From Pocillopora damicornis (lineage: Eukaryota), in contig NW_020845264.1 in NCBI RefSeq assembly GCF_003704095.1, positions 868,001 to 931,977 on the forward strand: 63,977 bases of DNA. Reading direction: 5' to 3'. A program made the translations under genes and the position numbers. Below the pieces are notes generated by a model, which ran no database searches, was not told where the DNA came from, and saw only the letters and a program-made list of their open reading frames with translations. Of the stretch, positions 1,959 through 36,875 are shown in pieces. The first letter of the stretch is position 1. Each line of letters begins with the position of its first letter.

Positions 1959-3035
1959 ATGGCGAACCAAAAGAGTTTATTACTAACGTATATTATTTGG
2001 CTCATATGGGGATGGCTCGGTCTGCATCATTTATATCTGGGTCGAGATATCCAAGCATTTATTTGGTGGTCAACAATCGGAGGTGTATTTGGCCTGGGAT
2101 GGTTTCGCGACCTTTGGCGTATTCCAGAATATGTTGACGATGCCAACGAAGAACGGTTTTTCGTCGAAGAACTCAAAAGAAAGATAAAGCTTAGGGGAGA
2201 ACCAGCATTTAGTGTAACCAGATTTTCAGGACAGATGCTTGTAGGATATTTTTACGGCATATTAGTTCGACTAGCGATACCTGAGGAGGCGAAATGGCTT
2301 CCGGCGTTGTTGGTACCTCTTGGGGTCGCCGTTGGTGTTTATCTCGTTGGAAACATTGGTCGAGAGAGGGGAGATTTTAAATATCCTTTGATGGGAGCTT
2401 TTATTGCTAATATAGCTTTGACATATCTTACTGGGGACGAGGCTGGTGCAATGTATGTGGCTCTAGTTGCTGCCATTTTTTTCCAAAACCGCCGCCAGTT
2501 TAGGAAGGAGAAACCGCAGGGCAAGACCTTATGCAAGCGGCTACAGTACTTGGCGATTGGCGGCTTAATTATTTGTTCCCTGTGGGGATCGTTCCTCTAT
2601 TTCAATGCACAAGTCACCACAGAAGATGGAGAAACTGTAAAGTTACGTGACGCTATAAATCACTTCTTCAATTCACCGGTGTGGCTCGAATTCAAGGAAG
2701 TATTTTGGGGTCTTTATGAAGAAGGTCAGAAGAACGGCTGGGACAATTTCTACGACGAGTTTGTTAAAGCGTTGGATCCCAGGGGAGAAAAGAACGCTTA
2801 TCGTGTCCTAGGGCTAACAGAAGATGCAACTCAAGAGGAAATAAAACGAAGATACAAGAAACTTGCAGTAAAGTGGCATCCAGACAAAAATCTAAACAAC
2901 AAAGAAGAAGCCCAACAAAAATTCATGGAAATTCAAGAAGCTTATGAAATTCTTTCGAAACTCAAAACAAAGAGAGCTTCTAAAAACACCAGAACAAGAA
3001 GTGAATTCGATCAACACGGTCATGAAGAATATTAG
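1959..3035 (+). CDS. DNAJC22: DnaJ homolog subfamily C member 22 (TM2 domain + TM helices + C-terminal J domain), intronless, 358 aa
   Basis: N-terminal TM2 motif (WLIWGWLGLHHLYLGRD...GLGWFRDLWRIPEYV), several hydrophobic helices, and a C-terminal J domain with HPD (AYRVLGL...KWHPDKN...FMEIQEAYEIL). Confidence 0.92.
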   Translation: MANQKSLLLTYIIWLIWGWLGLHHLYLGRDIQAFIWWSTIGGVFGLGWFRDLWRIPEYVDDANEERFFVEELKRKIKLRGEPAFSVTRFSGQMLVGYFYGILVRLAIPEEAKWLPALLVPLGVAVGVYLVGNIGRERGDFKYPLMGAFIANIALTYLTGDEAGAMYVALVAAIFFQNRRQFRKEKPQGKTLCKRLQYLAIGGLIICSLWGSFLYFNAQVTTEDGETVKLRDAINHFFNSPVWLEFKEVFWGLYEEGQKNGWDNFYDEFVKALDPRGEKNAYRVLGLTEDATQEEIKRRYKKLAVKWHPDKNLNNKEEAQQKFMEIQEAYEILSKLKTKRASKNTRTRSEFDQHGHEEY

Positions 3036-4938: not shown

Positions 4939-6825
4939 TTAGTTTACAATATCAACATAAAGCCTGACAAGTTGTTTTGATGCACTTGGCAAATGTGTGA
5001 CTGGACAGCATCCATGTTGATTGAGGTATTTGTGGATACAAGGGTAGCAGAAAACATAACCAGAGGAAGACAATGCTGTAGGATTAGTGCGAACTCTCTT
5101 ACACAGTGGACACTGAGCTGGATGTGGAGGGAGTTGGGCACCATGTTGGGCAGGCTGTAAACAATAACAAAAATGATGAGTACAGTAGAACCCTGCTTAC
5201 TCAAACTCAGTTCACCTCTTCCTACAACAAAAGTGATGAGTACATCAGAACCCCACTAACTCAAACTCATCAAGATAATTTGGGTTTCAATTGAGTTGAT
5301 AACGTAAATTGGCCACTGCAAAGAGATTCTAAGCTGATGTTTCAATTGCTAGCCCTTTATATTTTGCTCTGAAGAAGGGCTAACGCTTGAAACATTAGCT
5401 TGGAAAATCTTTACAGTGGCCAATTTACATCATCAACTCAGTTGATAAAACTCAATGATCTTGTTATACTTCCCCACCAAGTCAGCACCACAGTTTCTCC
5501 AGAAGTTTACCATATCACGCCATTAACTAAAACTCAGTTAACTTGAACCCACCAAAAAAGAGTGAGCACAATAGAGCCCTGCTAACTCCCAAACAGGATA
5601 ACTGAAATACACTACTCCCATTATCTCAAGCCCTGGTAACTCAAAGCATTTTCCTTTCTCTTGAGAGTTTGAGTTGACAGGGCTCTTTGGTAGTTTGAAA
5701 GGTCGGTAATCAGATTTACAGATGTCTCAAGCTACAAAATATTATCGAGTTTTGGGATCATTTGAGTGCCAGGCTAAAAGCTGTAATCATCATGTTTTGT
5801 ACAATCACACAAGCCTCATTTACCTCCTCTCTTTCACCTTGCCAAACACTTTGGCTTCTCTGAGAATAAACTGCCATGCAAATTCAGATATGAACATATC
5901 TCATGAATATCAAACCTTCCTTCTACATAAATACTCCAAATTAAATACCTCTGAGACAACCTACCTTAGGCTGGGTTGGTGGAGAGGGGACTGGTAACTG
6001 CATTACTGATTGAACAGTGCTTCTATTGTCACTTGAATACCACCACTCTATGAATTTAAGTGAAAACACAGCAATAGGAAGACCATTGGCTAACAATGAT
6101 GATAGCAGCCTTGTAACTGAGCATGGAATGGCCAGTATCTGTTTAACCATAGTCTGTCTGTAAGGAACTGTAGGAAGACTTCTCTGCAGATTGTGCACGA
6201 CAATGTCTCGTTGTGTGAATCTTTGTAAAGAGATTCCCACAATATGAAGTAAAGGAGAGTGAACGCCAGAGACTCTAAAGATATACAGCATGTAATAACA
6301 CAAAAAGATCGATTCCCACGCGCAATGCAAGAAGGGATACAAGTAAATAAATATTCTCTTGAGGTGCAGAAAATACAACCGCTTCCTGGCTGGATGGGAG
6401 GACAATGAACCAGTAACATACTCTTCTCTTAATCTTTCAAACAGCTGATCAAGTTTAAGTTTAGCATATGGAAGTACCACTAACATTAATAAAGACAAAT
6501 ATCTCTGCAAACTTGATAGTTTATCATCGGCATTGTTATTAGGGGTTCTGCTAACTCTTTTGAGCCCATAAAAATGTTCAGATATTGAACCTTCAAAGTT
6601 CCTTAAATAGTGACTCTGGAGAATATATTCTAAACATAGGTGAAGTTCGTCTCCGAAACGCCAAATCCAGCCCCATCTGTCAGGATTAGAACTTGCCAGC
6701 ACTTTCAACGCATAAATAACAGCCGGTCTTAGCACTGATGCCATAGATTCTTGGGCGACTATCTCAAATATTGTTGGTTGAGCGTTCAAAGTGCCTTGGT
6801 TCAAATGGGCTGCAAATTCCGCCAT
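4939..6825 (-). CDS. PEX12: Peroxisome assembly protein 12 (Pex2/12 N domain + C-terminal RING); exons 6825-5965, 5154-4939; 358 aa
   Basis: The start MAEFAAHL...PTIFEIVAQE..LRPA, SEHFYGLKR and FSLKFIEWWY motifs are typical of PEX12. A phase-0 intron after QPK leads to exon 2, which encodes the RING CPLCKRVRTNPTALSSSGYVFCYPCI...CPVTHLP...LVRLY. Confidence 0.95.
5290..5515 (+). mobile_element. Penelope-like fragment: long inverted repeat with a degenerate hammerhead core, in the PEX12 intron
   Basis: Arms at about 5292-5357 and 5375-5441 are inverted repeats. GCT-CTGAAGA-agggctaacgctt-GAAA-cATT-AGC at 5366-5399. Same family as 19712-19880. Confidence 0.65.
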
Positions 6826-6909
6826 ATTGAAGTTAGAGCGACTGGGTAACCAGGTGACTTCAAAAGACCGAGTAACCGAGAAGTAACCGAGTGAGTCGAT
6901 GATGTGTTG
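6826..6909. promoter_or_regulatory. 84-bp bidirectional promoter between PEX12 and the RJL-like GTPase, with an RFX X-box-like site and repeated GTAACC half-sites
   Basis: Divergent ATGs at 6825(-) and 6910(+). GTAACCAGGTGAC at 6846-6858. AGTAACCGAG occurs twice (6871-6891). Confidence 0.6.
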
Positions 6910-9900
6910 ATGGAGCGAAAGGCAGGGCACTTGACAAAGTCTGTGCAAGAGATTGCTGGATCTTTGTTCTGGATAAAGGTAAAAATTTCCTTTTAACTTT
7001 TTGTTCTATCTCTGTAATTCTTCAGTCTCATCGAATGGTTTGTGTCGTAGCTGAGCTAGTCTCGGAATTTCAAGTGCAACCAAGATTACTGATATCTCAA
7101 ACGAATTACGGTCGTTCCGCTGACGACCAGTTCGCTTACCTCTCATGAGACATAAGCGAACCGATCATAGGTCGTTTCGTTAACGTTTTATGATAAATTT
7201 TTAATTCCTCGAACCCTTACCGATTTTAGGGTTACTGACTCAACTGAAAATATCTCTTTCTAGCCCTGGTACCCACATTCATTACAGGATCACATTGTTT
7301 ACTAATACAGTCGAACCTGTCTTAACCCTTTACACCCTAGCATCAGTATGCATATTCTCCATACTGCTCTTTATACATTTCCTAAGGTGCTGAAAAGGAG
7401 AATTTGTTTACCAATCAAAAGCTTCTTTCATTGGTGATCATTTCCTTTATTCTCATGACCAAAACGTGTGATTCAGGGGTGATACTGTAGGGAGAAATTT
7501 GATGCTAGTCACTCTTAGGGTTTAAAGGGTTAAGCAGTCAACCAGGGGGAATGACCACTTAATACAGGTTGACCGCTAATGCAGGTTCCACAGAATAGGA
7601 GTATTATATATAAAAACCATAAGAGATGCCATGTTTTGCCATAATTGACCACAAAAGCTTGGTTAAAAAATACTACTTGCTTAGGGTCAGGTGAAGAGAT
7701 AAAGAGATAAAGATGGATTTAATTTCACTTAAAATATTATTCTTAGTTCTATTAGAGTGGTTGTACTTCAAGTGACCATACTATAAAGGTGGAAAACAAT
7801 ACAAACAGGCCATTGGGACTTAGTAAAGGGTGACCACAACCGCTTTATAGAGGTGACTGCTCAATAGAGTGTAAATTACAGTGATAAAGGGGAAGCAATT
7901 GGTGGATTTTGAAAATGTACCACTTAATGCAGGGTGATGGCTTAATACAGAGGTGTTTAATACAGGTTTGACTGTATACATTACTGTTTAGGCAGGAGAT
8001 TAATAGAGAAAACTTTTCTTTACCTGCAACCTGCTTCTGCATGGTTGTATCATTGAAAATATAATTGATGACAGAAAGTAGATTCAATGCCCCACATTTT
8101 GATGAGTGTCACAACAACACTACATCTGGACAATAGGAACAGTAACAATTAAATTCTGTTCGTAGTCCTATGTGAATATCTTCAATTCTCACACATTAGC
8201 TCTGATTTCTTTTAGGTTGTAGGAATAGGAAATGATGGCGTAGGGAAGACCTGCCTTGTCAAGAACTTTTGTGAGAAAAAGGTATATCAACAAGTTTCCT
8301 TGTTTGCAGAAGAACTGCACTAACTTAAACTTCCAGAGAAGACAAAATTGGTTCTTATCCAAGGAAAATCATCTTGTTTGAGTTAGTTGGGGGTTTGAGT
8401 TGACTGACTTGGGTTAATGAGGTTCTGCTGTATATAATCACGTTCTGTAAAACCATTTACAATATATGATAAACTATACATCTTTATAATTTTATTCAGT
8501 TTTCATTTGATGGAAAAACATGTGCACAACAGGAAAAACTACAGACTTTGTGTTCATGAACAGCAGCTTCAAAACTGATCTCAGTAAGAATCCTTTCACT
8601 TCTGTTTCCTCTCTTTAGTTTTCAAAAAGTTACCACCCAACTGTAGGAGTTGATTATGGTGAGTTAAAACTCCTTCTTAACCCAGTCTTTTTGGCTTGTT
8701 TATATATTTATTAATGATATTCAGACAGTGTGGCCCAGTTCAGCTGTATAAACAATAACTAGAATGTCTAGTAAAGGCAGCACATTCTTCTCAATTACTT
8801 CAAGACCCTGAGTGTTGGTCTGCTCTGGGACTTGAATTCTTGATTTGAGCTAGTATGAGCTATATTTCACCAAGCATGGTTGTATCATAATGAGTATATG
8901 ATCTTCATATTTTTTATAATTGTCTAGGCTTCAAGCTGCACAAAGTCAACAACATTGACTGTAAGTAAACCAACTCTATTGTGTTTCTGATATCTCACAG
9001 TGTCAATTACATGAAAATGTATGTCTCTTGGCCAAGTGGTTTTCTGAGCCACATTGCCTCTTGATGGAAATTGGGATGAAAAATCTTTTTCAACACCAAA
9101 GTTGAGTGTATGGGCAAAACCAAAGCAAAAACAATTCATAAGAAAGAAACATAAAACTGATCTTTTGTATTAATGGTTGAGTATAAAGGAAAAAAGTTAG
9201 AGCTTTCCCTCAGTTCTCCTTAAATTCAAAGTTTTATAAATAGCCCAGATTGAAATAATTTGCTGTATCTTAGGGTGCAACCCTTAACCTTCTACACCCT
9301 ATCATCAGTATGCATATTCTCCACACTGTCCTCTAGACATTTACTAAGGTGCTGACCTGGAGAATTTGTTGAACACTAGGAGCCTCTTTAGTTGGATATC
9401 TTTCCTTTATTCTCTTGACCCTAGTGTGTGATTCAGAGGTGATATTGTAAGGAGAAATTAAATACTAGTCACTCTTAGGGTTTAAAGGGTTCAAAGCTTT
9501 CACTTTAAGATTAATGTGATAGAAAGATATTCAGTAGCAGAATATAACTGGAGACAGTAAAATGACCCTTCTGCTTCTATGTGTGCATGTGCTTTGCAAT
9601 GACATAATTTCTTACCAACGACTTCTTTGAATGAAAAAAAGAAAGAACATGATACCACTTTTTAAAATTTTTGCATTATTTAGTATATATATCTTTTAAA
9701 CATGGACTGCTCTTAATAAGTTACCTGTGATCTCTCCTTTTTTCAGACAGAATTAACTTCTGGGATTTTGGAGGTCATACAGATTATGATGAAATTAGAG
9801 TAGAACTGTATGGCCAAACACAGGTTTGTCCATTGTTTCTTAATGGCTTTTTTCTGACCTCAGTTCAAGAAAAATCAATATAAATGTAATTGGTACTAAT

Positions 9901-19880: not shown

Positions 19881-20800
19881 TATCATTACCGACTGTCAGC
19901 TCCAGTAAAATCTTTAGAGAATTTTTCATTCAATGAATGTCATAGCTTTTCACTAGTTCATCGAAAGAAAAAATAGATTCAAACCTCCTTTTTCTAAAAA
20001 CAATATAGCATTTTGCACTCTCGAAAGTTGTTGACCTTTGTTTGCTGAAAACAAATGAATTTCCTGTCAGATCTGTGTTTTTTTCTTCACCCAAGCAGAA
20101 AAGCTTACATTAGCTTCTTAAGAGATGTCTCTTGAAGAAAAAAACAGAGAAAGTTTATCGGCCTGACTATTATATTTATTTTGACTTGAGAAAGTGATTC
20201 TCCCGCATAATATTCCTAAATTAATTGTTAAAAGAACTATCGAAACTGATGAAATTGAAATTGATTACAAATCAAACATTCCAATCAAACGCACTTGATA
20301 TAGTTCAGCAAGAGAGAATCAAGTTTGATTCTTCAGCGTTTACATTATTTTGTACACGCTCGCATTCAAAACAAGCGTGGTTTGTTTTTTTTTTATGAGT
20401 AACGTACACCTTTTTCCTTCCTCTCAAGAGTTTTAGGGTGCGTCAAACCTTATAATTAGCATGTGAAACTGCTGGGCAATAACTATATTAGCTGAAGCAG
20501 TCTTTCATGTTCACAGGCGTGTTATTAAGGCTTCCCTCGGGGACAATTTAAGTGTTATTAATCATACGGTCTCGTGACGCATAACTAGTAGATATATCGC
20601 CACAAGCCAGGCCGTAGATCACTCTTACGTGGCCACAGATTCCTTGCGGATAATTTGGCGATGAAGGGTGAGACTTGTTTGACAAGTTCCTTTAAACAAA
20701 TATGTTTTGAATATTTCTGACTTGGTCAACAGATAGCAGGGAAACATCATTTTCCTATGGCTGAGAATTTCAGCACTAACCTCGTATTTGTCTTTTACAG

Positions 20801-23023
20801 AGTACAATTTTGTTGAGTCAGATGATGACTCAGGTTTCAAAGATGATTCAAGCGTCGCATTCTCAGTGGAAAGCGGCCAGTCAGAGCGAGTTGCCACTTA
20901 CAAAACTAAATCTTGGAACTGCTTCGCCACAAAAAAACAGAAAGCTAAAGTAAAACAAGAACAGGAAGAAAATGGCACCGGGTATGACAACCCACGAAAA
21001 CAAAACTTCTTTAAAAGAGCAACCAGAAAGATCTTTGGCAAGACCAGGCGGAAGTTTAATAAGAAACATCAAGATAACAAAATGAATACCACAGTGAAAA
21101 CGGAAAAGAAACTGAGAGAAAATTATACGGAACAGGTGGCCATTATAATACCGTCAGACAGCTGTGCGAGTGTGAATGAGGAGCCAGCACCTTACCCTCA
21201 AAATGTCAACTTCATTCGAGCAGAGAAGATGCGATGCTCGATTCGAGAATCCCGCGGCTTGAACCCGCGGGAAGCTTTCCGGCTTCGCGAGAGACAAACC
21301 ATGCTTCGAGTTCTGTTTGATTTTCAAGCATGTGATGACGATGATATTTCCGTGATGAGAGGAGAACTTGTTCAAGTACTCAACAAAGATGATAAGGATT
21401 GGTGGTGGGTTGAAAATGAACATCGACAGAGAGGATTTGTGCCGCGAAACTTTCTTTGGCCCTGTGGCTGTTACGGTAAGACAACATCTTTTATATAGAA
21501 CTAACATAACTTAACTAAGTTTCTCCTTTTGAAGAAACAGTACATAAATGGCTCCTTTTTTCAAGTAATTTTCTTGTATGAGTTGGCATATTTACAAAAA
21601 CATCGGTATAATAAAGTCAATATATATCAGCGATGCTTAAAAGTAAAAAATCATCCAAAACTGAATGGGCCAAAACGAGGTTGTCAAAATTGCTAACAGA
21701 TTATTGGACACCTTTTTGTTTTCGTTCATTCAGTATAAGGATAATCCAGTTCGAGAATTTATTTTTCTGAGGGAAAAAAAGAACAGAATTGACTCTGTTG
21801 ATCTTTGGTTTTGTTATCAGCAAGAGAAATCTTTATTGCTAAAGCTTTATTACCTGCGACACACATTACCCGGGAGATGTGCTTGAGAAAGCACACCAAT
21901 GAATAAATGAATACGTTGAGTCCGATATCACTTCGGAATTGTTTGAAATTCGCTCAGTCGCTTAAACAAAGAAGAATAGAGATGAGTGGTTGGAAATGGA
22001 AATAAAAATTTATTCAGGTTCATGGCACTTGACATGCACTCTGTCGATATTTTTGAAATGTCATGCTTACTGTGGGAAACTGAAATGGAATTAAAATGCC
22101 ACTATGTTACAACCGAGTATCAAAACATTGACATTTCTTAACGACTATTATTTTTACCTCATTAGTATCTTATTCCCGCGTTTAATTCCATCATAAGAAT
22201 GCTTTTATAGTATTTGCCCATTATGATACATATTTATATTGAGAGATCAGTGAGAGTATTATCACATCGTAAAATACAGGCACGAACTTTGCATTGGGCG
22301 CACTCCTCTGTGGTCGGGTGGGACATAAATACTTCGTAGAAAATATTCTTAAAGCTAACTTCATTGATTCAAGATTTGAAAGTAGATTTTATGGTTTGTA
22401 AGATCATTATAAGGACAAATTGAGGGAAAGTTATCGCTCTCCTAATATAGAAAAAGTGATATTGCTTCTTAGATCATTTTCAGGAATGATGACGACTCTT
22501 CGCTTATCTCACAATGTTCTTGTATTGTCAACGGCTATTGACGTTAAAACGCTAAGCATCATTCACAAATGTAAAATTCGAGACACAAAGACTAAATGTA
22601 GTGTCGTTATTTTGAGGGAAGGGGTGGGTTTGCTTTTTGGTGAGGTATTGGTAACTAATATGAAGATGAGATCTGGCGCAAAGTGTTACCGTGCGCCAGT
22701 GGGCACGAGGAGGGTTAAAACTTGTCATAGCTAACTCTCTATCTTTAGGTGCCTATGTTAATTTAATTGCCTTTTAGTTAATTAACGTTTAATTTGTGAT
22801 ATAAATGGTTGAACAGCTACAGAGTTTTCAAATGCCTTTTTTTTCTACTGTAGTGTGTCAACAGTTTATTTTGGACAGAGTGACGAATGTGGGCCCAGTC
22901 CTCAGCGACCAGAACATTGAACAGCAACGGTTCCAGGCAACTGATCAATTCATCAGGGAGGAATCGTTTGGCGAAAGAACACGGCTCATTGGAAACAAAA
23001 GATACACGAGTACATGGTGCTGA
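20801..23023 (+). CDS. SH3-domain protein (basic N-terminal region + single SH3); exons 20801-21475, 22854-23023; first coding exon not located
   Basis: SH3 motif VLFDFQACDDDDISVMRGELVQVLNKDDKDWWWVENEHRQRGFVPRNFL. The phase-1 donor at 21475 (TACG|GTAAG) joins the acceptor at 22854 in frame to ...RYTSTWC*. The exon at 20801 needs an unidentified phase-1 upstream exon. Confidence 0.8.
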
Positions 23024-24263: not shown

Positions 24264-27200
24264 ATGTCGAAAGGACCAGCAGTTGGAATCGATCTTGGTA
24301 CCACGTATTCTTGTGTTGGAGTTTTTCAACATGGGAAAGTGGAAATTATCGCAAATGATCAGGGAAATAGAACAACACCAAGCTATGTAGCGTTTACTGA
24401 AACGGAACGCCTGATTGGAGATGCTGCAAAAAATCAAGTCGCAATGAATCCCTCAAACACGATTTTTGGTGAGAATTCAAAACATATACATTCTTTATAA
24501 TCGAAGAGCGATGGCTGAATGTGTGCCCATGTTCCTTTGCAGATGCTAAGCGATTGATAGGTCGACGATTTGACGATCCTTCGGCGCAGGCAGATATGAA
24601 ACATTGGCCCTTCCAGGTGAAAAGATGTTGGCTTTTTCGGAATTTGTTGAGTCTTGATTGAAGTCTCAGATTTTAATTGAACATCTTATTAAAAACTGAT
24701 ATGATTATTGTACAAAGTGATACCATTCTTTCTTAACTGTCAGTCAAAAGAAACGTTACCTTTATCTAAGTAACTTACTTTCGTTTTCTAGATCATTAAT
24801 GACTCTGGGAGACCTAAAATACAAGTGGAATATAAAGGAGAAACTAAAACATTCTACGCTGAGGAGGTATTTAAGAGATTAATTAGTTTCATCGAGGAAA
24901 ATACTTTCTGGAATACGAACTCATTATATCAATAGCCCCAGCCATGCCTGCTAGTCATACCTCCCAAATTTTACTTCACAACCAGTAACCGTCGATGAAT
25001 TATTGATCTGCAATGACTCAGCCATGATTGCAACAATTCACTAAGATTTTGTAACTAACATCTGTAACAAATTACTTAAAATCAGATATTAGATAGATGG
25101 GTCAAGCTTCTAAAACCATGATAGGTTTTCCCTGCAACATCAGAAGTCATGTAATATTTTTAGGGCCAAGTAATCCTACTCCTTGTTTTGGACGGTTACC
25201 TCCAAGCTTTTGATCAAGATTTATTGGGTATTCTTTAACTACCAACAGAACCCTCCTTTTATCATTTGTCAATTTCTTGTTTACAGATTTCCTCTATGGT
25301 GTTGACAAAAATGAAGGAAACAGCTCAGGCATATCTTGGAAAAACTATCACAGATGCTGTGGTGACTGTGCCAGCGTATTTCAATGATTCTCAGCGCCAG
25401 GCTACAAAAGACGCAGGTTGGTTTAAGTGATACAAATAATGGGAGATTTTACAAACTATAGTAATGATTTAACCTTTTAACTCTGAGTAGTGATTGACAT
25501 GTAACTTCTCTCTATGATATCCAACATTATCAAGCAAACAGGTAATTAGAATACTCTTAATTATCAGGTAGAATTTGGTATTTTGATTTAATACAAAATT
25601 CCCATTTATTAATTTATAAATGTGTAATGAAGTGTGTTGTAGCTAGAGGGGAGAATGAACAATCAGATCTTGGAAATTAAACCTGAATAACAGGCCCAAA
25701 CAAAAAACTTAACTGAGGTGGCTTTTGTTGGTTATTTTCAGGTAGAGTGTGAAGTAATAAAGTATATAAAGTTTTATGATATGATGAGCACACTTGTGTT
25801 TAATGTGTTATCTGAACCTTGTTCTACTTTGCTCATCCTGTGCAAGTAAACGTGAAATTTTAATACGGAAAAATTCCAAAGTTGATTTGGAAAATTACGA
25901 TGAATGTAATTTACAATGAACTCACGATGAACCTAATTTGTGCTTTAATGTTCTTTCTAAGGTGTGATTGCTGGCTTAAATGTCTTGCGTATTATCAATG
26001 AGCCAACTGCTGCTGCCATTGCATATGGTCTGGACAAGAAAGTTGGTTCTGAACGCAATGTCCTTATCTTTGATCTTGGTGGTGGTACATTTGATGTCTC
26101 CATTTTGAGCATTGAAGATGGTATATTTGAAGTCAAATCTACGGCTGGAAACACTCACCTTGGGGGTGAAGACTTCGACAACAATGTTGTTGATTTTTTT
26201 GTGAATAATTTCAGAACAAAGTACAAGAAAGATCTTTCAACCAATAAACGTGCTCTGCGTCGCTTGAGGACAGCCTGTGAACGTGCCAAGAGGACCCTCT
26301 CCTCCAGCACCCAAAGTAGTATCGAGATTGATTCCTTGTATGAGGGAATTGATTTTTATACCTCACTTACTCGTGCCAAGTTTGAAGAATTGAACAGAGA
26401 TTTATTTGACAAAACCAAAGACCCTGTTGAAAAGGCTTTAGGTGATGCTGGATTGGCCAAGAACCAGGTTCATGAGGTTGTGTTGGTTGGAGGATCAACT
26501 CGCATCCCAAAGATTCAAGAGAAGCTGCAGGATTTTTTTGATGGCAAAGAACTCAACAAAAGCATCAATCCAGATGAAGCTGTAGCCTATGGTGCTGCAG
26601 TTCAAGCTGCAATTCTGAGTGGTGACAAGAGTAGTGAAGTTCAGGATTTGTTGCTTCTAGATGTAGCACCATTGTCACTTGGAATTGAGACTGCAGGAGG
26701 AGTTATGACAGTTCTTATCAAGCGCAACACAACCATACCCACCAAGAAGACAGAATCCTTCACTACCTATTCAGACAATCAAACCAGTGTCCTAATCCAG
26801 GTAAGCAGTGGTGTCAGGGAAGAAAAATCAAAGAAAAGTGTAACTGTGCTCTTAGAATTCAGCTGTTGCCCTTAACCCATTAAATCAAGAAGAGCTCCCC
26901 AAAAAACCTGNNNNNNNNNNNNNNNNNNNNNNNNNNNNNNNNNNNNNNNNNNNNNNNNNNNNNNNNNNNNNNNNNNNNNNNNNNNNNNNNNNNNNNNNNN
27001 NNNNNNNNNNGCTCTTCTTCACAATTACCCTAACATTAGTATCTATATTCTCCAAACTTTTCTCTAGACATTTCATTTTGTACCTGACAAGAAGAATTTG
27101 TTTAACAGTCAAAGCTTCTTAGGTTGGAAATCACTTTATTCTTATGATGTTAATAAATGATTCAGTAATATTACTGTAAGGGGAAACTAGATGCTCGCTG

Positions 27201-30129: not shown

Positions 30130-31930
30130 TTCCAGCAGTCCAGTTGTTCCCTTGTTCCAACCTTTCCTGAATATTCAATTATTTCTCCCAAACTCCGTCT
30201 TAGCAAAGTAGTATTTGGTTTACCTAAAACTGAGACAACACCTAGTCACGTTTTGGAGCTGGAAGTCGACTTCTTTTTGTGCTGATGCACCTCTTGTATA
30301 GCTCATAATTTGGTGGAGAACATAGGTGGCAATGATTCCCGAAAATTATGCGTGCCTCTTTATTGGTAAGTTTTACTTTGTTCGACCTAGCCTAGCGACC
30401 GTCATTTAAACTTGTGCTGTTACTCGATTGTTGTACGAAACTAGTATGTGACTGATAAACTAGTGACTATCGAAGACTCCCTCATTCTGTAAAGTCGTCG
30501 AATCCCGACTTAGATTACTGTTTAACAATCTTTAAGATCATCCATGAACCAAACAGTCGAATTGTTTTAAATCTGAACTACGACGTAGTAGTTTTTTTTT
30601 TTTTAGTTTTTTTTTTCTCGAGACGTGAGCTTGGGCCGCCTGTGATCTGAAAACCCTTATGCATGAAGTACGCTCCAGAGTTGCTGTTGGGAATGGGCTT
30701 GATAATTTTTGAATTACAGAGTAGTCACTGTCGTAAGATTTTCGTAAGTTTGAGCTTATTTGTCTGAAAGCTTGGCCAATTTTGTTTTAACTTAAAAAAG
30801 AGTGAATGTCTTAGTAGGTACACCGAACAACATACGCGCACGACAACGCAAATTTCGAAATCTCATTCAACACGATGAACAATCTTTCCGATGCGCTTTT
30901 GTTAAAATTGTCAAATTTGACATAACAAGAATCACCTCTGCAAATTTTTCGTTTGTTATGTTCCCTTAATATGAAAATTACAAATTTAATGACACGAGGA
31001 ATTAATACTAGCAGCTTGGGTAAGTACCCTTATATTTTTGGGCTTTCAAATTTTACTCCAGCAGTTTGTCGTTCCAGCAGTTCAGTTGTTCCACCGTTCA
31101 AACCTTTCCGGAATATTCAATTATCTTACCCAGTCCCCCTCTTAACGAAACAGCTTTTAGTTTCACTAAAACTGAGACAACACCTAGTCACGTTTTGGAG
31201 CTGAAAGTCGACTTCTATTTGTGCTGATTCACCTTTAGTACAGCTCATAATTTGTTGTAAAGGGTAGATGGTAGTGCAATGACTCCCGAAAAATATGCGT
31301 GTCTCTTTATTGGTAAGTTCTACTTTGTTCGACCTCGCTTATTGACCGTCGTTTAAACTCTGGCCCGGGATCCGATTATTCAGCGAAACTAGTATGTGAT
31401 TGCTAAACTAGTTACCTTCAAAGACTTCTTTAATTCCGTAGAGTCATCGAATCCCGACTCAGATGACTGTTAAAAACTCTTTAAGGTCATCCATGAAACA
31501 AACAGTCGAGTTGTTTTAAATCTGAAAACCCTTATAATAATTTACCTTGAAAAGTTGCAATTAGGGATAGGCTTGATAATTTTCGACTTATAGAGTAATT
31601 ACTGTGGTAAGGTTAAGCTTATTTGTATGAAAGCTTGGCTCATTTTTTGTTTTAACCTTAAAAGAGTGAATGTCCTAGCAGATACACCGAACAATACTCG
31701 CGCACGACGACGTAAATTTTGAAATCTTACTCATCACGATTTACAATCTTTCCCATGCAATATTTCCGCTTATGTCAAAATTATCAAATTTGACATAACA
31801 AGCAACATTTCTGAAAATTTTTCGCTTGTTGCGTTTTCCTGAAAATGAAAATCACAAACTTAACGACACAAGGAATTAATACTAGCACCTTGGGTAAGTA
31901 CCCTAAGATTTTTGGTCCCTCAAAATTTAT
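30130..31930. repeat. About 0.9-kb tandem segmental duplication carrying the first exon of the DegT-like gene; third partial copy at about 32500-32645
   Basis: Unit 1 (about 30130-31058) and unit 2 (about 31070-31930) align along their length, for example CTAAAACTGAGACAACACCTAGTCACGTTTTGGAGCTG, CTCTTTATTGGTAAGTT and GGAATTAATACTAGCA.CTTGGGTAAGTACCCT. Confidence 0.92.
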
Positions 31931-34900
31931 TATTGTCAGGCGTTTATCATACGATACCAAAGACTAACTAACGGCTGGCGTGTGTCTGACTAAATAAAAC
32001 ATCAAGGTTTTGTTTTAGTTAGATACTCTATTTGCTCAGTCAAGCATCAACCGTCAGTAAGTCCCACATCATTAAAAAGCGAAAATTCTTGTAAGTACAC
32101 TTACTACCATTCCTGAATAAATGCAGCCTCAAACGAGTACTCTTGATTTGGTAATCTTTGAAAAATTTTAAAGAAGTTGTTGTTCACTCGACTGAATTGT
32201 GACAGTTTCTCCAAAGTCCATTAAAAAGAGACCTGCATCTGAGAGTAACAAGATTGTTCAGTACTTACCACAAGTAAATGCTGCATATAAATTTTAACAA
32301 TAAATTTTGTCAGGTGTCATTTCCGCAAGCATACTGTATTTGTGCATTCAAGAGCTTCTTTTAGAAGCATGTGGGATCAATTGTGAAGGCCAGTCCTGAC
32401 TAATTGCCTCATCTATGATTCCCTAAATATTGCAATAAGGAGATTTAAGTTCCATAGAAGGGACTTTTGTGGATTTTGTTTCTTGGGATTTTCACTGTTT
32501 GTCTAGTTGTACTCCACATACCTATTATCCTTTCCAGCAGTTCAGCTGTTTCACCACTCCAGCCTTTCCTGAATATTTGTGTACTCTACTCAATATCACT
32601 TGTATACAAAGCTTTACTTGTTACCATAAAACTGAGACTGGTAGTGTAACTGAAAAAATAACATGGTATGTTCTTGTCCTAAATAGCCCTGAAGTCTTAA
32701 GCTTTGATAAAGAGGTTTTAAACAACAAAATAGATTTGTGGCTGGTATGGTAATGTTGAATAATAATTCTTGAGATGTTTGTGCCAGAAAATGTTTAATG
32801 TTTTGTTGTAGTTCCAGCCTACAGGTAATGCAGAACAGTTAACCCTATAACTTCCATGAGTGATCAAGACAGAATTTCTCCTTACTATATCACTACAATA
32901 TCAAGTAGACAAGAGATAAGAATAAAGGAAACTATAAATTAGGGGATTTTTAGTTGATCCAATACCAAATTATAAAAACTAACAATATGAGAATTGCATG
33001 GCAGTGAGTAAGGGGAATTACTGATGAGATCTTGGGAATGAAAGGGTTTGTCCCGCATGCAGCAATACATGACTGAGGTATAATAGGAGAGACAAAAGTA
33101 TCTTGAATATCATTGTCTTTTTTTTATTTTTTCTTCAGATGCAACATGGAAAGACATCATAGCTGCTTTCCGTTGTTCAGCTGTCAATAACAGCTCTCAA
33201 GAGAGAAAGCTTATTCAAGGCAAACTTGAAAAACTGTTTGGTGGCTCAGAACAATGGCTTGCATGCCTTTCAATTCGAACTGCTTTAGATGCATTCTTAA
33301 CTGTTATGAATTTTCCTCATGGATCAGAATTAATTTTCACTGCCATAAATATTCCAGATATGGTATCAGTAGTTGAAAGGCATGGCCTTAAGGTTGTACC
33401 AGTGGATTTAGATCTTGATTCACTAGCCCCCAAACCTGAACTTGTTGAACTTGCTGTAACAGATAAAACAGTGGCAATTTTGGCAGCTCACTTGTATGGG
33501 AAGTGGATCAATTTAGACAAAGTGTTCCAAGTGGCACATTCACATGGACTATATGTATTGGAAGATTGTGCTGAATCATTTCAAGGCCTGGGAAGAAAAG
33601 GCCACAAACTGTCTGATCTGACATTTTTCAGTTTTGGTTCAATCAAACATTACACCTCTTTTGGTGGGGCCATGGTCAGGGTGAAAAACTCACAGATTCT
33701 TTCAAAAATGAGAGCAAAGATACACGAATACCCAGTCCAAAACCAGTGGACCTACTTTAAGAAACTTTCTTGTTACTCTCTGTTAATGGCAGCTGTATTA
33801 AACAATTCACTGTCCAATTGGTTCTTGGTCAATTTGTTTCATCTAATGGGTTTCAAGTATAAGGAATATTTCATTTCCCTGCTGCGAGCATTTCCTGGTG
33901 GTATAAGTTTGGACAAACTTCGTCTTCAACCATCTGCTATGCTTTTGGAATTCATGTTATACCGGCTGAGTAGAGTGAAAAGTAAAGACTTCCGTATGAT
34001 CAAGTTAAAAGGAGATTTTGTGAGCAGTAATCTGCCAAGTAATGTGTTTGTACCTGGTCAAAGAGCAGACATAAAAAGTTATTGGTTGTTTCCCCTGATA
34101 GTGGTAAGTATGCAATGTTATGATGTGTCAGACCCCTTCCCTCTTCCTTTCTCACTTGGATTTAACCCTTTTCACCCTAAGATCAGTATGCATATTCTCC
34201 ATACTGTTCTCTACATACATTTTGTAGGGTGTTGACAAGGAAAATCTGTCTCACAATCAGAGCTTCTTTTGTTGGTGATCATTTTCTTATTCTCCTGACC
34301 TAAATGTATGATTCAGGGGTAATTGTGTAAGGAGGATTTACATGCTTGTCACTCTGGAAATTTTAGTAAAGCAGAAGCAGCATTTTCTGATATTACAGAA
34401 GGAAAACTCAGTTGACCATCAGCTTTAAACAGGAGAACATGCTTCTAATTGAAAAAAAAAGGTTTACAAAAAGGTTGTCAATTCTGATGATTCAACTGAA
34501 CCTTTTCTCCTCTGGGATCTGAATTTCAATTCTCGACACTGTCTATCACACAATTTTTACTACTTTTGCACTGGAAATTTGTTATTTTAGCAAACAATAT
34601 CATACAGTTGATATTTTTCTTTACATCTCACTGCTGCAAATTGTATTGATATAGAAATAAAAAATTACTTTCTCTTCATTCCTGAGAGTGAAGGGGTTAA
34701 GTGGCTAATAAATAGGAAAAGTACAGCCTGCCTGCCTGCCTGCAGAATGTAAACCTAGCCTGTCATTGTTTTTTCTCTTTACATCCTTACATCAATATCC
34801 ATATTTTCCATACTCTTCTCTAGATATTTTCTTTGTTACTGACAAGGAGAATTTGTCATCAACTCAAAGTTTCTTAGATTGGTGGCCATGTTTTCATTCT

Positions 34901-35519
34901 AACTCCTAGGAGACATTACTAGTGTATGCTGGTCACAGTTAGGGTTTGAAGGGTTAAAAGTTATTCAGAGAAACTAAATTCAAAAACATAATGCAAAATG
35001 TAAAGCAGTCCTTATCTGATTTTTTTTAAGGATGACCCAGATGAAGTTGTTACTGCACTTGAGAAGGAAGGTGTTGAGGCATACAGAGGCGCAACGCAAC
35101 TTTCCACTGTTTACAGAACAAAGCCTACTGCAGCAGACCAAAAAGACAAGGCTAAGATCAGGCAGGAAAATCAAACGGAAAAGCTCCTCTATTCTTTCTC
35201 AACATCTCAACCAGAAGTAGCTGCTGGTTCTGGTTCATCTAAAGGAAATGCTGCCAGCAGATACACTACAGAATTCATTTGCTCTGCACCAGTCAACACT
35301 GCAACCACAAAACACACCTTTAGCAAAGAAAAAGATGATGTGCTCTTTCCTCACAATGCCAAATACCTGATTGATCATGTGGTGTACCTGCCAGTGCACA
35401 AGAGAGTTTCATTTTGGTATCTTGAACATATATGTAATTCTGTGGAGAAAGTTATGAAAAACCGAGTAGGGGTCAAAATTGCCAATACCAGCAATGTGTT
35501 ATTTAAGTCCAAGTTGTAG
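31279..35519 (+). CDS. DegT/DnrJ/EryC1/StrS-family PLP-dependent aminotransferase-like enzyme with C-terminal PTS1 (-SKL); exons 31279-31312 (or duplicate 30332-30365), 33139-34103, 35031-35519; 495 aa
   Basis: Family motifs GLKVVPVDLD, AILAAHLYG, VLEDCAESF (PLP-binding Asp), FFSFGSIKHYTSFGGAM (Schiff-base Lys), YWLFP and VVYLPVH. Exon phases 1 and 0 are consistent. The protein ends FKSKL*. The choice of first exon is inferred. Confidence 0.85.
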
Positions 35520-36875
35520 ATTTCAGAAAATTTTATTTTATTATTTGAAGATGTACTATATTTCCTTGAATAAGGGCCCATGCTCTACTATTAGCCCTCT
35601 GCCCTGAATAAGTGCCCCCCCCCCTCCTGCTCCCTTGAAAGAGTTGGTATTTGTTTCATAATAGTTGTTATGTTTTTATGCAGAGGAGTAAACTTAAATA
35701 TGAATCAAAGATTGAGCTTTTTATCCATCATGAGATAGATAAGTAGTATCAACAAAATCACTATTAATGAATTATCTGCTATTTTCCAAGGTTTCTTAAA
35801 AATTATATTCATGGTAAGAAGTAAGAATTACAAAGGGAATAAGCAAGGATTATTTTAAAATGTTGAGTAATATATGCACCAGAGAGGAGAGACAAAAATG
35901 TCCTTTTTCTTATTATTGAAGTACCTCCTCAAAGTACAATGAATTAGTAAGTTTTAGTAATGTTTTCTTCATTGTTTTCCTTTTTTACATTCAGGTTCAC
36001 AATCCAGTGTTTCCTTTCTTTTAATTATTTATTAGCAAAATGAATCTAATAAACAGAAATCTCAAAATGATTAAAAATAACAATTGCTGTGAAGCCTCAG
36101 TACTTTTTTTGCTGTTTGTTGTGATCTCTTCTTGAATGTGACTTTTCCTTCATATCTTACTTTGAAACTTTAGTAGCATCTTTTGTGCTCCTCAAAATTG
36201 AATTTTGGCAGCCATTTTGGTAGCCAGTAATTAGTGCTATAGTCACCTGGCAGGAGGTGAGAGATGATGCAATCCTCAACCAATGAGAACACAAGAATCT
36301 CTGTAATCACTTGGGCAATTATGTTAATATTGTATAACTATTTTCTGAACAAATTCAGGTTGTTTTTGTGTAATTGCCAGTTACAATAAGAATACTATTA
36401 ACAGAACAAAGTGCATGAACATCACCACAGAAAGTTCCTGGAATGAACAGAAGTTTACAAAATGCTGAGGGGGTGGGGGGGGGGGGGGAGCAAGGCTCTA
36501 AGACCCTGCAGGGGAGCATGTGGGAAAGGATTGCAGCCCAGGTAACAAAAAAATCTAAGTTACAATGCTCCACATTTATTATAAATACAAGAAATCCATA
36601 CAAGATTGCATCTCAACATTTGGAAAGATACAAGGGAAAGGAAATAATCCTAGCACTCAGATTTGTACTGGGGGTGCCATATGTACAGTTATTATTGTTA
36701 ATAAAAAGTAAAAGACACTCTGAAGACCAAATTATAAATACAGCCTAGTTTAAAATGTACATCAAAATGGTCTAGAGACACTCGAGGACATGTTTTTGCT
36801 AACTGATTTTCTTCCAATGTACAGGATTAAATTTATTTCACAATCTCCCCACACACTATTGGTGTGATCCACCTG

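What the first reader, a model, noticed from the sequence alone, without database searches (positions are those of the whole stretch)
31279..35519. Intron-containing, bacterial-type DegT/DnrJ/EryC1/StrS PLP enzyme with a perfect peroxisomal PTS1 (-SKL)
Seen: once the third exon (35031-35519, missed by the ORF track) is spliced on, the 495-aa protein keeps the PLP Asp (EDCAE) and Schiff-base Lys (SFGSIKH) and ends FKSKL*. Known: this family is mostly bacterial and makes amino sugars for LPS, antibiotics and AHBA, and SKL is the canonical PEX5-bound signal. Inference: this is a domesticated gene (it has spliceosomal introns) of ancient-retained or horizontal origin, and it gives an animal peroxisome an aminotransferase-type activity on an unknown substrate such as an amino-lipid, amino-sugar or secondary metabolite. 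It is the best candidate here for an undescribed pathway.
Basis: partly seen in the sequence, partly recalled or inferred. Interest (0 to 1): 0.8.

Follow-up and report, generated by a model that had tools for sequence, protein, structure and literature searches.

The report
Peroxisome-tagged DegT-type PLP enzyme gene
A three-exon coral gene encodes a bacterial-type (DegT family) vitamin-B6 enzyme ending in the peroxisome import signal SKL. The same gene, introns and signal are kept in most invertebrate phyla and some protists, yet I found no paper describing what it does.

Summary
Exons at 31279-31312, 33139-34103 and 35031-35519 have GT..AG borders. RNA contigs from four studies carry the exon 2-3 junction, contigs from two of them carry the exon 1-2 junction, and one contig spans all three exons. 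The product is 495 aa. Over exons 2 and 3 it is 100% identical to the deposited Pocillopora damicornis protein RMX46425.1 ("hypothetical protein"), so the gene model is not new.

Exon 2 matches Pfam DegT_DnrJ_EryC1 (E 2e-29). Asp154, Ser176 and Lys181 are invariant in 71 relatives. The predicted fold (pLDDT 88) matches sugar aminotransferases.

The gene is single-copy and not a recent transfer. Orthologs occur in Cnidaria, molluscs, annelids, nemerteans, echinoderms, hemichordates, amphioxus, tunicates, a centipede and tardigrades, and their tree follows the species tree. Both introns sit at the same codon position and phase in coral, anemone, abalone and amphioxus.

A canonical PTS1 ends 24 of 28 named animal orthologs and 35 of 46 eukaryotic members, including Plasmodiophora, Pythium and Leptophrys, against 1 of 77 bacterial relatives.

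Bacterial relatives are stand-alone genes outside sugar clusters and only sporadically sit next to oxidoreductases. The substrate is unknown. I found no paper on this clade.

The parts
31200..31278 (+). 5' UTR (at least this much); in-frame stop TAA at 31258-31260
   Evidence: RNA contigs X8 record 17 and X9 record 24 cover 31200-31311 and run past the left end of the laid stretch; sequence read
31279..31312 (+). Exon 1 coding part: MTPEKYACLFI plus the first base of the Asp12 codon; GTAAGT donor follows
   Evidence: P0140 begins with the same residues
31313..33138 (+). Intron 1 (phase 1, inside the Asp12 codon), GT..AG; carries repeat copies
   Evidence: joint 31311/12->33138/39 in RNA contigs of X8 and X9; same position and phase in Exaiptasia, Haliotis and Branchiostoma
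33139..34103 (+). Exon 2: residues 12-333, the PLP-binding large domain and helical region of a DegT-family fold
   Evidence: Pfam PF01041 E 2.2e-29; PDB sequence hits 7b0m 7e-19 and BtrR 2e-17; 100% identical to P0140 13-333
33564..33566 (+). Codon of Asp154 (EDCAE), predicted partner of the PLP pyridine nitrogen
   Evidence: aligned to the family Asp; invariant in 71 sequences; coordinates
33645..33647 (+). Codon of Lys181 (SFGSIK), predicted Schiff-base lysine
   Evidence: aligned to the family Lys; invariant in 71 sequences; coordinates
34104..35030 (+). Intron 2 (phase 0, after YWLFPLIV), GT..AG; holds two copies of a high-copy repeat
   Evidence: joint in all four RNA runs; same position and phase in Exaiptasia, Haliotis and Branchiostoma
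35031..35519 (+). Exon 3 coding part: residues 334-495 plus the TAG stop; C-terminal small domain
   Evidence: 100% identical to P0140 334-495
35181..35315 (+). Codons of residues 384-428: predicted disordered, lineage-variable loop
   Evidence: pLDDT under 50 in the AlphaFold2 model of the 90%-identical ortholog P0002; sea-urchin orthologs carry about 390 aa at the same place
35508..35516 (+). Codons of Ser493-Lys494-Leu495, a canonical PTS1 at the extreme C-terminus
   Evidence: kept in 24 of 28 named animal orthologs; last four residues have pLDDT under 50, so are predicted flexible
35520..35700 (+). 3' UTR (at least this much)
   Evidence: RNA contigs of all four runs continue from exon 3 to 35624-35700 and beyond

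Best explanation
[quoted passage not shown] Shown: it is transcribed and spliced from three exons into a 495-aa protein. That protein has the family fold, the Asp154/Ser176/Lys181 PLP triad, no N-terminal extension, and a flexible C-terminal tail ending -SKL. Inferred: the folded, PLP-loaded protein (a dimer, by family analogy) is recognised through -SKL by the PTS1 receptor PEX5 and imported into the peroxisomal matrix. There it works as a ping-pong aminotransferase. An amino donor (Glu or Gln, by family analogy) converts PLP on Lys181 to PMP, which then aminates a carbonyl substrate; the reverse reaction would serve catabolism. The substrate is not known. My best guess (about 45%) is a free or phosphorylated keto-sugar, keto-cyclitol or polyol-derived ketone rather than a nucleotide-sugar. 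A keto-lipid or keto/amino acid (about 30%) is the next option. The speculative reason for the peroxisomal address is coupling to an H2O2-producing flavin oxidase that makes or removes the carbonyl. The gene was inherited vertically from before the cnidarian-bilaterian split, and probably from earlier eukaryotes. No vertebrate, insect or nematode ortholog appears among the named hits, which suggests loss there.
For: Gene model and expression. Family and catalytic residues: Pfam PF01041 E 2.2e-29; PDB sequence hits; invariant R58, I83, E153, D154, A156, S176, F177, K181, W327, P454 in 71 sequences. Fold: AlphaFold2 pLDDT 87.9, pTM 0.86; Foldseek top hits are all sugar aminotransferases or dehydratases with TM about 0.75 on the target. 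Single copy and the only DegT gene in the genome. PTS1: 24 of 28 named animals; 35 of 46 eukaryotes against 1 of 77 bacteria, Fisher 7e-20; residues upstream of the tripeptide vary while the tripeptide is kept. Vertical descent: animals form one clade (SH-aLRT 96) with Cnidaria|Bilateria and Protostomia|Deuterostomia as in the species tree; 45 eukaryotes form one clade (96). Shared intron positions and phases in four species of three phyla. The N-terminus aligns with the bacterial N-terminus, so there is no presequence. Not a sugar-cluster gene: no neighbour family occurs in more than 8 of 80 bacterial loci, and no nucleotidyltransferase, dehydratase or glycosyltransferase is among the top neighbour families. 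Sporadic operon partners are carbonyl-making oxidoreductases: FAD_binding_4 of the sugar-lactone-oxidase/DprE1 type overlapping upstream, DAO-type flavoprotein overlapping downstream, and GFO/IDH/MocA dehydrogenase. A Pex2/Pex12 peroxin gene lies in the same window, so the import machinery exists.
Against: No localisation or enzymology exists; everything after 'spliced mRNA' is inference. The Pfam model covers only positions 37-203 of 360, so the C-terminal half is divergent. The aromatic residue that stacks on PLP in solved relatives is an invariant Ile here, and the SGT phosphate motif reads S-I/V-R, so cofactor binding or chemistry may differ. No NCBIfam equivalog is approached (best 64 bits against a cut-off of 631). 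Bacterial contexts are heterogeneous: besides oxidoreductases they include lipid-type enzymes (Asp_Arg_Hydrox 5 loci, PlsC-type acyltransferase 3, FA_hydroxylase 2) and a beta-keto-acid cleavage enzyme. They therefore do not fix a substrate class. Orthologs of the bacterial FAD_binding_4 and DAO-type partners were not found in the coral genome. Four animal orthologs lack a canonical PTS1 (two tunicates, Capitella -SQL, Hypsibius).
Confidence: 0.8

Rival explanations
1. It is a bacterial contaminant or a recent horizontal transfer into corals.
For: The closest non-eukaryotic relatives are bacterial (Planctomycetota, Alphaproteobacteria, Cyanobacteria) at 32-44% identity. The family is overwhelmingly bacterial.
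Against: There are two GT..AG introns spliced in poly(A) RNA. GC content is 36-37%, like the rest of the window. Orthologs occur in at least nine animal phyla with a species-tree-like topology. Both introns are shared with anemone, abalone and amphioxus.
Confidence: 0.02
2. The protein is cytosolic or dually located; the -SKL is masked or only weakly used.
For: PTS1 function depends on context. The two tunicate orthologs, Hypsibius and Capitella have non-canonical ends. Nothing was localised.
Against: The tripeptide is conserved across Cnidaria-Bilateria and in Rhizaria and an oomycete, while the preceding residues drift; 1 of 77 bacterial relatives has it. The tail is predicted flexible. There is a basic residue at -4 in the coral (FKSKL).
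Confidence: 0.1
3. It is peroxisomal but not an aminotransferase: another PLP chemistry (dehydratase, lyase, epimerase/racemase, decarboxylase) or a non-catalytic scaffold.
For: The PLP-stacking aromatic is replaced by an invariant Ile and the SGT motif is altered. The C-terminal half is not recognised by the Pfam model. The DegT family also contains dehydratases (ColD, E1) among the fold matches.
Against: The known family dehydratases replace the Schiff-base Lys by His (recalled from the literature on ColD/E1; the E1 H220K entry is among the hits). Here Lys181 is invariant. The Asp154/Ser176/Lys181 triad is fully kept, which argues against a pseudoenzyme.
Confidence: 0.15
4. It is a classical nucleotide-sugar aminotransferase making an amino sugar for invertebrate glycans. 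This is what the automatic database names suggest (ArnB-like, perosamine-synthase-like, BtrR-like).
For: Best sequence and fold matches are such enzymes. Source names given to orthologs are listed.
Against: All NCBIfam equivalog scores are far below cut-off. Bacterial members of this subfamily are stand-alone, without nucleotidyltransferase, 4,6-dehydratase or glycosyltransferase neighbours. I know of no nucleotide-sugar pathway in peroxisomes (own knowledge). It is the only DegT gene in the coral genome.
Confidence: 0.12

Closest known systems
Bacterial DegT/DnrJ/EryC1/StrS sugar and cyclitol aminotransferases (ArnB, PseC, GDP-perosamine synthase, BtrR, 7b0m)
   Same: Pfam family, predicted fold-type-I architecture, catalytic Asp/Ser/Lys, and size of the core.
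   Different: Only 14-18% identity in structural alignments. The C-terminal half is not matched by the Pfam HMM. Ile replaces the stacking aromatic and S-I/V-R replaces SGT. It is a eukaryotic, intron-bearing gene ending in a PTS1. It reaches no curated equivalog cut-off.
Stand-alone bacterial subfamily (N-terminus MWxRKRLDxxW; Planctomycetota, Alphaproteobacteria, Cyanobacteria, Chloroflexota; at least 577 species loci)
   Same: 32-44% identity over the full length, with the same subfamily signatures (R58, INIPDM, EDCAE/Q, FSFGxIK, YWxFP).
   Different: No PTS1 (1 of 77), no introns, uncharacterised, and on the other side of the best-supported split in the tree.
Alanine-glyoxylate aminotransferase (AGXT), the textbook peroxisomal PLP aminotransferase
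   Same: A fold-type-I PLP enzyme sent to the peroxisomal matrix by a C-terminal PTS1 and imported folded (own knowledge). It may work in a similar way.
   Different: Different family (class V, PF00266). The window protein hits PF00266 only at E 0.04, below cut-off. AGXT's substrate is known; this one's is not.
'Novel aminotransferase' of the DegT family in Andalucia godoyi, apusomonads and an amoebozoan (PMC7050145)
   Same: A DegT-family gene of bacterial ancestry resident in eukaryotic nuclear genomes, with function unknown.
   Different: That group is predicted mitochondrial, from an N-terminal presequence, and is reported from only three protist lineages. The clade here is PTS1-tagged and spans animals and SAR protists.
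Karenia brevis wecE-17 and mviM/wecE genes (PMC2064935)
   Same: DegT-family genes in a eukaryote, one fused to a GFO/IDH/MocA-type dehydrogenase. This echoes the dehydrogenase-plus-aminotransferase pairing seen in L050 and L051.
   Different: Described as a lineage-specific horizontal transfer with an N-terminal extension. Not PTS1-tagged and not in animals.

Membership tests
DegT/DnrJ/EryC1/StrS family (Pfam PF01041) | Score above the Pfam gathering threshold | tested here: met
   103.3 bits against 19.8, E 2.2e-29, but only profile positions 37-203 of 360; the same hit appears in the six-frame genome search
DegT/DnrJ/EryC1/StrS family (Pfam PF01041) | Schiff-base lysine, and aspartate to the pyridine nitrogen, at the family positions | tested here: met
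   K181 and D154 align with the Lys and Asp of 7b0m and BtrR; invariant in 71 sequences, as is S176
DegT/DnrJ/EryC1/StrS family (Pfam PF01041) | Fold-type-I two-domain architecture like solved members | tested here: met
   AlphaFold2 model of ortholog P0002 (90% identical), pLDDT 87.9; Foldseek probability 1.00, TM about 0.75 on 7b0m, TlmJ, ArnB and perosamine synthase. This is a predicted structure, not a solved one
DegT/DnrJ/EryC1/StrS family (Pfam PF01041) | Aromatic residue stacking on PLP and the SGT phosphate-binding motif | tested here: not met
   Invariant Ile83 aligns with the Phe/Trp of solved relatives; the motif reads S-I/V-R (R58 invariant). This is a subfamily deviation shared with the bacterial relatives, and the alignment around SGT is gapped
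Named nucleotide-sugar aminotransferases (ArnB, WecE, PseC, RfbH, DesI, LegC equivalogs of NCBIfam) | Score above the curated equivalog cut-off | tested here: not met
   Best is ArnB at 64.4 bits against a cut-off of 631; all others are lower
Named nucleotide-sugar aminotransferases (ArnB, WecE, PseC, RfbH, DesI, LegC equivalogs of NCBIfam) | Relatives embedded in sugar-nucleotide, O-antigen or antibiotic gene clusters | tested here: not met
   In 80 bacterial loci no neighbour family occurs in more than 8 loci, and no sugar-nucleotide enzymes are among the top neighbour families
PTS1-targeted peroxisomal matrix proteins | Extreme C-terminal tripeptide [SAC][KRH][LM] | tested here: met
   -SKL followed by the stop codon, carried by the spliced RNA contig
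PTS1-targeted peroxisomal matrix proteins | Signal conserved in orthologs and absent from non-peroxisomal (bacterial) relatives | tested here: met
   24 of 28 named animals; 35 of 46 eukaryotes against 1 of 77 bacteria
PTS1-targeted peroxisomal matrix proteins | Accessible, unstructured C-terminal tail and no competing N-terminal signal | tested here: met
   pLDDT under 50 for residues 492-495 and 73 for 481-490; the N-terminus aligns with the bacterial N-terminus from residue 6 or so. Prediction only
PTS1-targeted peroxisomal matrix proteins | PEX5 binding and localisation in peroxisomes | not testable with these tools
   Needs cell biology. Only the presence of a Pex2/Pex12 peroxin gene in the window was seen

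The most novel reading that the evidence does not exclude
Peroxisomes of most non-vertebrate animals and of several protist lineages run an undescribed amination or deamination step. In it this DegT-type enzyme is paired with an H2O2-producing flavin oxidase to make or degrade an amino-sugar, aminocyclitol or amino-lipid. The pathway would have been overlooked because vertebrates, insects, nematodes and yeast, the organisms in which peroxisomes were defined, appear to lack it.
Probability: 0.35. Interest if true: 0.85.

Novelty: new variant of a known kind. Interest (0 to 1): 0.66.

Why it matters
The list of peroxisomal matrix enzymes comes almost wholly from mammals, yeasts and plants. Here is an enzyme of a family known for bacterial amino-sugar and aminocyclitol chemistry. 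It carries a peroxisomal address that has been kept since before the cnidarian-bilaterian split and also in distant protists. It is annotated everywhere as 'uncharacterized', or with mutually contradictory by-similarity names. If localisation and activity hold, it points to a metabolite class and a peroxisomal function with no counterpart in model organisms. It would also be a clean example of a gene apparently lost in vertebrates and not seen in insects or nematodes, and a handle on invertebrate-specific metabolism in corals, molluscs and echinoderms. The question is directly testable with one recombinant protein and one GFP fusion.

Tried and rejected
1. Conserved bacterial neighbourhood as a guide to function. 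BLAST clustering of 983 ORFs from 80 loci and Pfam tallies of 134 immediate and 145 wider neighbours gave no partner in more than 8 loci. Only sporadic pairings appeared: FAD_binding_4, DAO, GFO/IDH/MocA, SDR, Asp_Arg_Hydrox, PlsC-type acyltransferase, FA_hydroxylase.

2. Co-inherited partner in the coral. The bacterial FAD_binding_4 partner finds only a BBE-like single-exon oxidase without a PTS1 (E 2.6e-9). The DAO-type partner finds nothing with that query. Both leads were dropped.

3. Fusions as Rosetta stones. The 680-812-aa sea-urchin forms are an internal loop expansion, not an added domain. The Saccostrea innexin fusion looks like a merged gene model. The Chromera DegT-Redoxin fusion was noted but is uninformative.

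4. Eukaryotic gene neighbours in Exaiptasia, Haliotis, Branchiostoma, Pythium and Plasmodiophora showed nothing shared.

It was repeated with a 13-sequence bacterial alignment.

6. Literature. DegT+peroxisomal, DnrJ+EryC1+peroxisom, DegT+PTS1, EryC1+coral, EryC1+metazoa, locus tags, and PTS1+sugar aminotransferase gave no paper on this clade. Hits were name collisions (Degterev, Degtyareva) or other DegT groups.

7. C3/C4 specificity motifs of nucleotide-sugar aminotransferases could not be applied, because the motif matrices are not in the text.

8. Not done. Exons 2 and 3 were searched by reference, exon 1 (11 codons) was only read, and full-length work used the database proteins P0140 and P0002. 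The large representative search was not run because the word searches settled the family. The tree was not rooted with canonical DegT outgroups.

Full report
**What is in the sequence.** The window has about 36-38% G+C throughout and comes from a 234.35-Mb, 4393-contig assembly. The exact protein match below names the organism as the coral Pocillopora damicornis.

On the + strand an ATG at 31279 follows an in-frame TAA at 31258-31260. Ten further codons and one base lead to a GTAAGT donor at 31313. An acceptor (ttcttcag) precedes 33139. The frame then stays open to GTG|GTAAGT at 34103/34104. A second acceptor (tttaag) precedes 35031, and the frame ends AAG TCC AAG TTG TAG at 35519. The three parts add up to 495 codons.

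**Transcript evidence.** I laid RNA contigs from four runs of four different studies (coral and marine poly(A)/oligo-dT libraries) on 31200-35700.
- The 34102/03->35030/31 GT..AG joint is in all four runs.
- The 31311/12->33138/39 GT..AG joint is in two runs, with a variant of it in a third.
- One 1722-nt contig (X9, record 24) carries exon 1, exon 2 and exon 3 in one piece.
- No alternative 3' exon was seen.

Intron sequence is also present in low-depth contigs. The very high depths inside the introns belong to repeat copies, not to this gene.

**How the full-length protein was handled.** Exons 2 and 3 were always given by reference. Exon 1 is too short to search and was only read. For full-length work I used two database proteins returned by the tools:
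- P0140 (RMX46425.1, 'hypothetical protein pdam_00000612 [Pocillopora damicornis]', 495 aa). It is 100% identical to exon 2 over residues 13-333 and to exon 3 over residues 334-495, and it starts with the exon-1 residues.
- P0002, a 90%-identical Stylophora-type transcript product.

So the public annotation already contains the three-exon model. The exon was 'missed' only by the ORF track.

**Family and fold.**
- Exon 2 scores 103 bits (E 2.2e-29) on Pfam PF01041, but only over profile positions 37-203 of 360. Exon 3 has no Pfam hit.
- NCBIfam equivalogs (ArnB, WecE, RfbH, PseC, DesI, LegC) are hit at 47-64 bits against cut-offs of 375-650. The protein therefore belongs to none of the named enzymes.
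- Fifty-three solved DegT-family chains match by sequence. The best are 7b0m (7e-19) and the 2-deoxy-scyllo-inosose aminotransferase BtrR (2e-17). Asp154 and Lys181 sit on the catalytic Asp and Lys.
- In a 71-sequence alignment the invariant residues are R58, I83, E153, D154, A156, S176, F177, K181, W327 and P454.
- An AlphaFold2 model built on that alignment has pLDDT 87.9 and pTM 0.86. It has a disordered loop at 384-428 and a floppy last tetrapeptide.
- Foldseek returns only sugar aminotransferases and the related dehydratases, with TM about 0.75 on the target.
- There are two deviations from solved relatives, both shared by the whole subfamily. The aromatic that stacks on PLP is an Ile, and the SGT phosphate motif reads S-I/V-R.

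**Distribution, descent and the PTS1.** The gene is single-copy and is the only DegT gene in this genome. Two word-based searches found orthologs, all named 'uncharacterized' or given contradictory by-similarity names, in these groups:
- Scleractinia (Pocillopora, Stylophora), Actiniaria (Exaiptasia, Nematostella) and Octocorallia
- many molluscs
- annelids (Owenia, Capitella) and nemerteans
- sea stars, brittle stars and sea urchins
- hemichordates, three Branchiostoma, and two ascidians
- the centipede Strigamia and two tardigrades
- outside animals: Plasmodiophora, Pythium oligandrum, the vampyrellid Leptophrys, Chromera, Teleaulax and unnamed marine protists

No vertebrate, insect, nematode, fungal or plant name appears among the best 120 hits. 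That is soft evidence of absence.

In a 123-row maximum-likelihood tree, 45 eukaryotes form one clade (SH-aLRT 96). The 28 named animals form one clade (96) that splits into Cnidaria and Bilateria, and then into protostomes and deuterostomes, as the species tree does. Pythium and one unnamed -SHL sequence sit weakly on the bacterial side. The tree is unrooted.

Both coral introns are at the same codon position and phase in Exaiptasia, Haliotis and Branchiostoma. Intron 1 is in phase 1 inside the Asp codon after (F/Y)(I/M). Intron 2 is in phase 0 after YWLFPxxV. Many genomic read-through ORFs of other species end ...YWLFPxVV-VS, which is the translated GTAAGT donor.

A canonical [SAC][KRH][LM] end is present in 24 of 28 named animal orthologs and in 35 of 46 eukaryotic members, including Plasmodiophora -SRL, Pythium -SRM and Leptophrys -SRL. 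Among bacterial relatives the count is 1 of 77 (Fisher 7e-20). The rows are related, so the p-value overstates independence, but the tripeptide is held while the residues before it vary. The exceptions are the two ascidians, Hypsibius, and Capitella (-SQL).

This rules out contamination and recent transfer. It places both the gene and its peroxisomal signal before the cnidarian-bilaterian ancestor, and probably earlier in eukaryotes.

**What the bacterial relatives say.** At least 577 species-level bacterial loci encode relatives at 32-44% identity, mostly in Planctomycetota, Alphaproteobacteria, Cyanobacteria and Chloroflexota. Clustering all ORFs within 8 kb in 80 loci, and Pfam tallies of neighbours, show no conserved partner and no sugar-nucleotide, O-antigen or antibiotic cluster.

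Recurrent but rare partners are carbonyl-forming oxidoreductases:
- an overlapping upstream FAD_binding_4 protein of the sugar-1,4-lactone-oxidase/DprE1 type in Planctomycetes and a Nitrospirales genome
- an overlapping downstream DAO-type flavoprotein in two Alphaproteobacteria
- an operon of GFO/IDH/MocA dehydrogenase, unknown protein, DegT, class-III aminotransferase and APH-type kinase in two Alphaproteobacteria

Also recurrent are lipid-type enzymes: LpxO/OlsC-like Asp_Arg_Hydrox in 5 loci, PlsC-type acyltransferase in 3 and FA_hydroxylase in 2. These fit an 'alcohol or amine to carbonyl to amine' module, but they do not fix the substrate class. Orthologs of the two flavoprotein partners were not found in the coral.

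**Mechanism proposed.** Shown: a spliced, expressed mRNA for a DegT-fold protein with an intact PLP triad and a conserved PTS1. Inferred, in order of decreasing confidence:
1. PEX5-dependent import of the folded, PLP-loaded protein into the peroxisomal matrix (about 0.85).
2. Ping-pong transamination through Lys181 (about 0.75).
3. A non-nucleotide keto-sugar, cyclitol or polyol substrate (about 0.45), or a keto-lipid or keto/amino acid (about 0.3).
4. Coupling to an H2O2-producing flavin oxidase as the reason for the compartment (about 0.35).

**Comparison with what is known, and novelty.** The family is well known, and the coral gene is deposited. In the searchable library I found no paper on a PTS1-tagged DegT clade in eukaryotes. 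The two eukaryotic DegT groups I did find are different:
- a predicted mitochondrial one in Andalucia, apusomonads and an amoebozoan
- dinoflagellate wecE genes with N-terminal extensions

The nearest functional analogue is AGXT, a class-V PLP aminotransferase with a PTS1. I rate the finding a new variant of a known kind: a known enzyme family in a new, deeply conserved compartment and lineage, with unknown substrate.

**Limits.**
- No experiment was done.
- The tree is unrooted and was built with a quick search.
- Absence from vertebrates and others rests on named hits only.
- The structure model is of the 90%-identical ortholog.
- The literature library lacks most subscription journals.

Noticed in passing
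window 30130-31060 and 31072-31930: A tandem duplication of about 940 bp (80-89% identity) covers the promoter/5' UTR, exon 1 and the start of intron 1. The upstream copy keeps an intact ATG, ten codons (MIPENYACLFI) and a GTAAGT donor at 30332-30371, so it could be an alternative first exon. None of the Pocillopora transcript products seen starts that way.
   Followed up: partly
window 32710-33160, 34069-34370, 34824-34974: Repeat copies inside both introns have RNA k-mer depths up to about 50,000 in all four runs. They produce many false 'joints' between 3421x and 3483x. This is a very abundant, transcribed short repeat family of the coral.
   Followed up: no
window 5944-6948 (-): A 335-aa ORF matches Pfam Pex2_Pex12 (E 1.8e-35). 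A peroxin of the matrix-import machinery thus lies about 25 kb from the PTS1-tagged gene. This is probably coincidence, and the neighbours seen around the Exaiptasia gene are different.
   Followed up: partly
window 1959-3032 (+), 20788-21495 (+), 25964-26872 (+): Other long ORFs in the window: TM2 + DnaJ domains, an SH3 domain, and an HSP70 fragment (profile positions 158-444 of 599).
   Followed up: no
window 35520-35700 and beyond: RNA contigs that start in exon 3 run 0.7 to 4.9 kb past the stop codon (X1 record 8, X8 record 23). This means either a long 3' UTR or overlap with a downstream transcript.
   Followed up: no
P0161, P0167, P0169, P0179, P0187, P0205 (sea urchins): Sea-urchin orthologs are 680-812 aa because of an insertion of about 390 aa with no Pfam domain. 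It sits exactly where the coral has its 78-aa, partly disordered linker (residues 361-438). Most of these forms still end -SKL.
   Followed up: partly
P0232 (Chromera velia): The DegT domain is fused to a C-terminal Redoxin/AhpC-TSA domain (PF08534, E 2.6e-30), and the protein has no PTS1. AhpC/Redoxin genes are also immediate neighbours in 2 of the bacterial loci.
   Followed up: no
P0049 (Clavelina), P0164 (Phallusia): Both ascidian orthologs lack a PTS1 (-NML, -IFP) and form a long-branched pair. This may be relocalisation in tunicates or errors in the gene models.
   Followed up: no
L090 10030-10050 (Exaiptasia): Intron 1 of the Exaiptasia ortholog appears to use a GC donor (G|GCAAGT) at the conserved position.
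   Followed up: no
L091 751-2292 (-) = G000:C2671: A single-exon 513-aa ORF encodes an FAD-linked oxidase whose C-terminus looks BBE-like by eye. It has no PTS1. It turned up while looking for a partner oxidase.
   Followed up: no
L094 14540-17119 (Plasmodiophora): Within 3-6 kb of the Plasmodiophora ortholog lie an Aminotran_1_2 gene and a TRAM_LAG1_CLN8 (ceramide-synthase-type) gene on the opposite strand. This may be chance in a compact genome.
   Followed up: no
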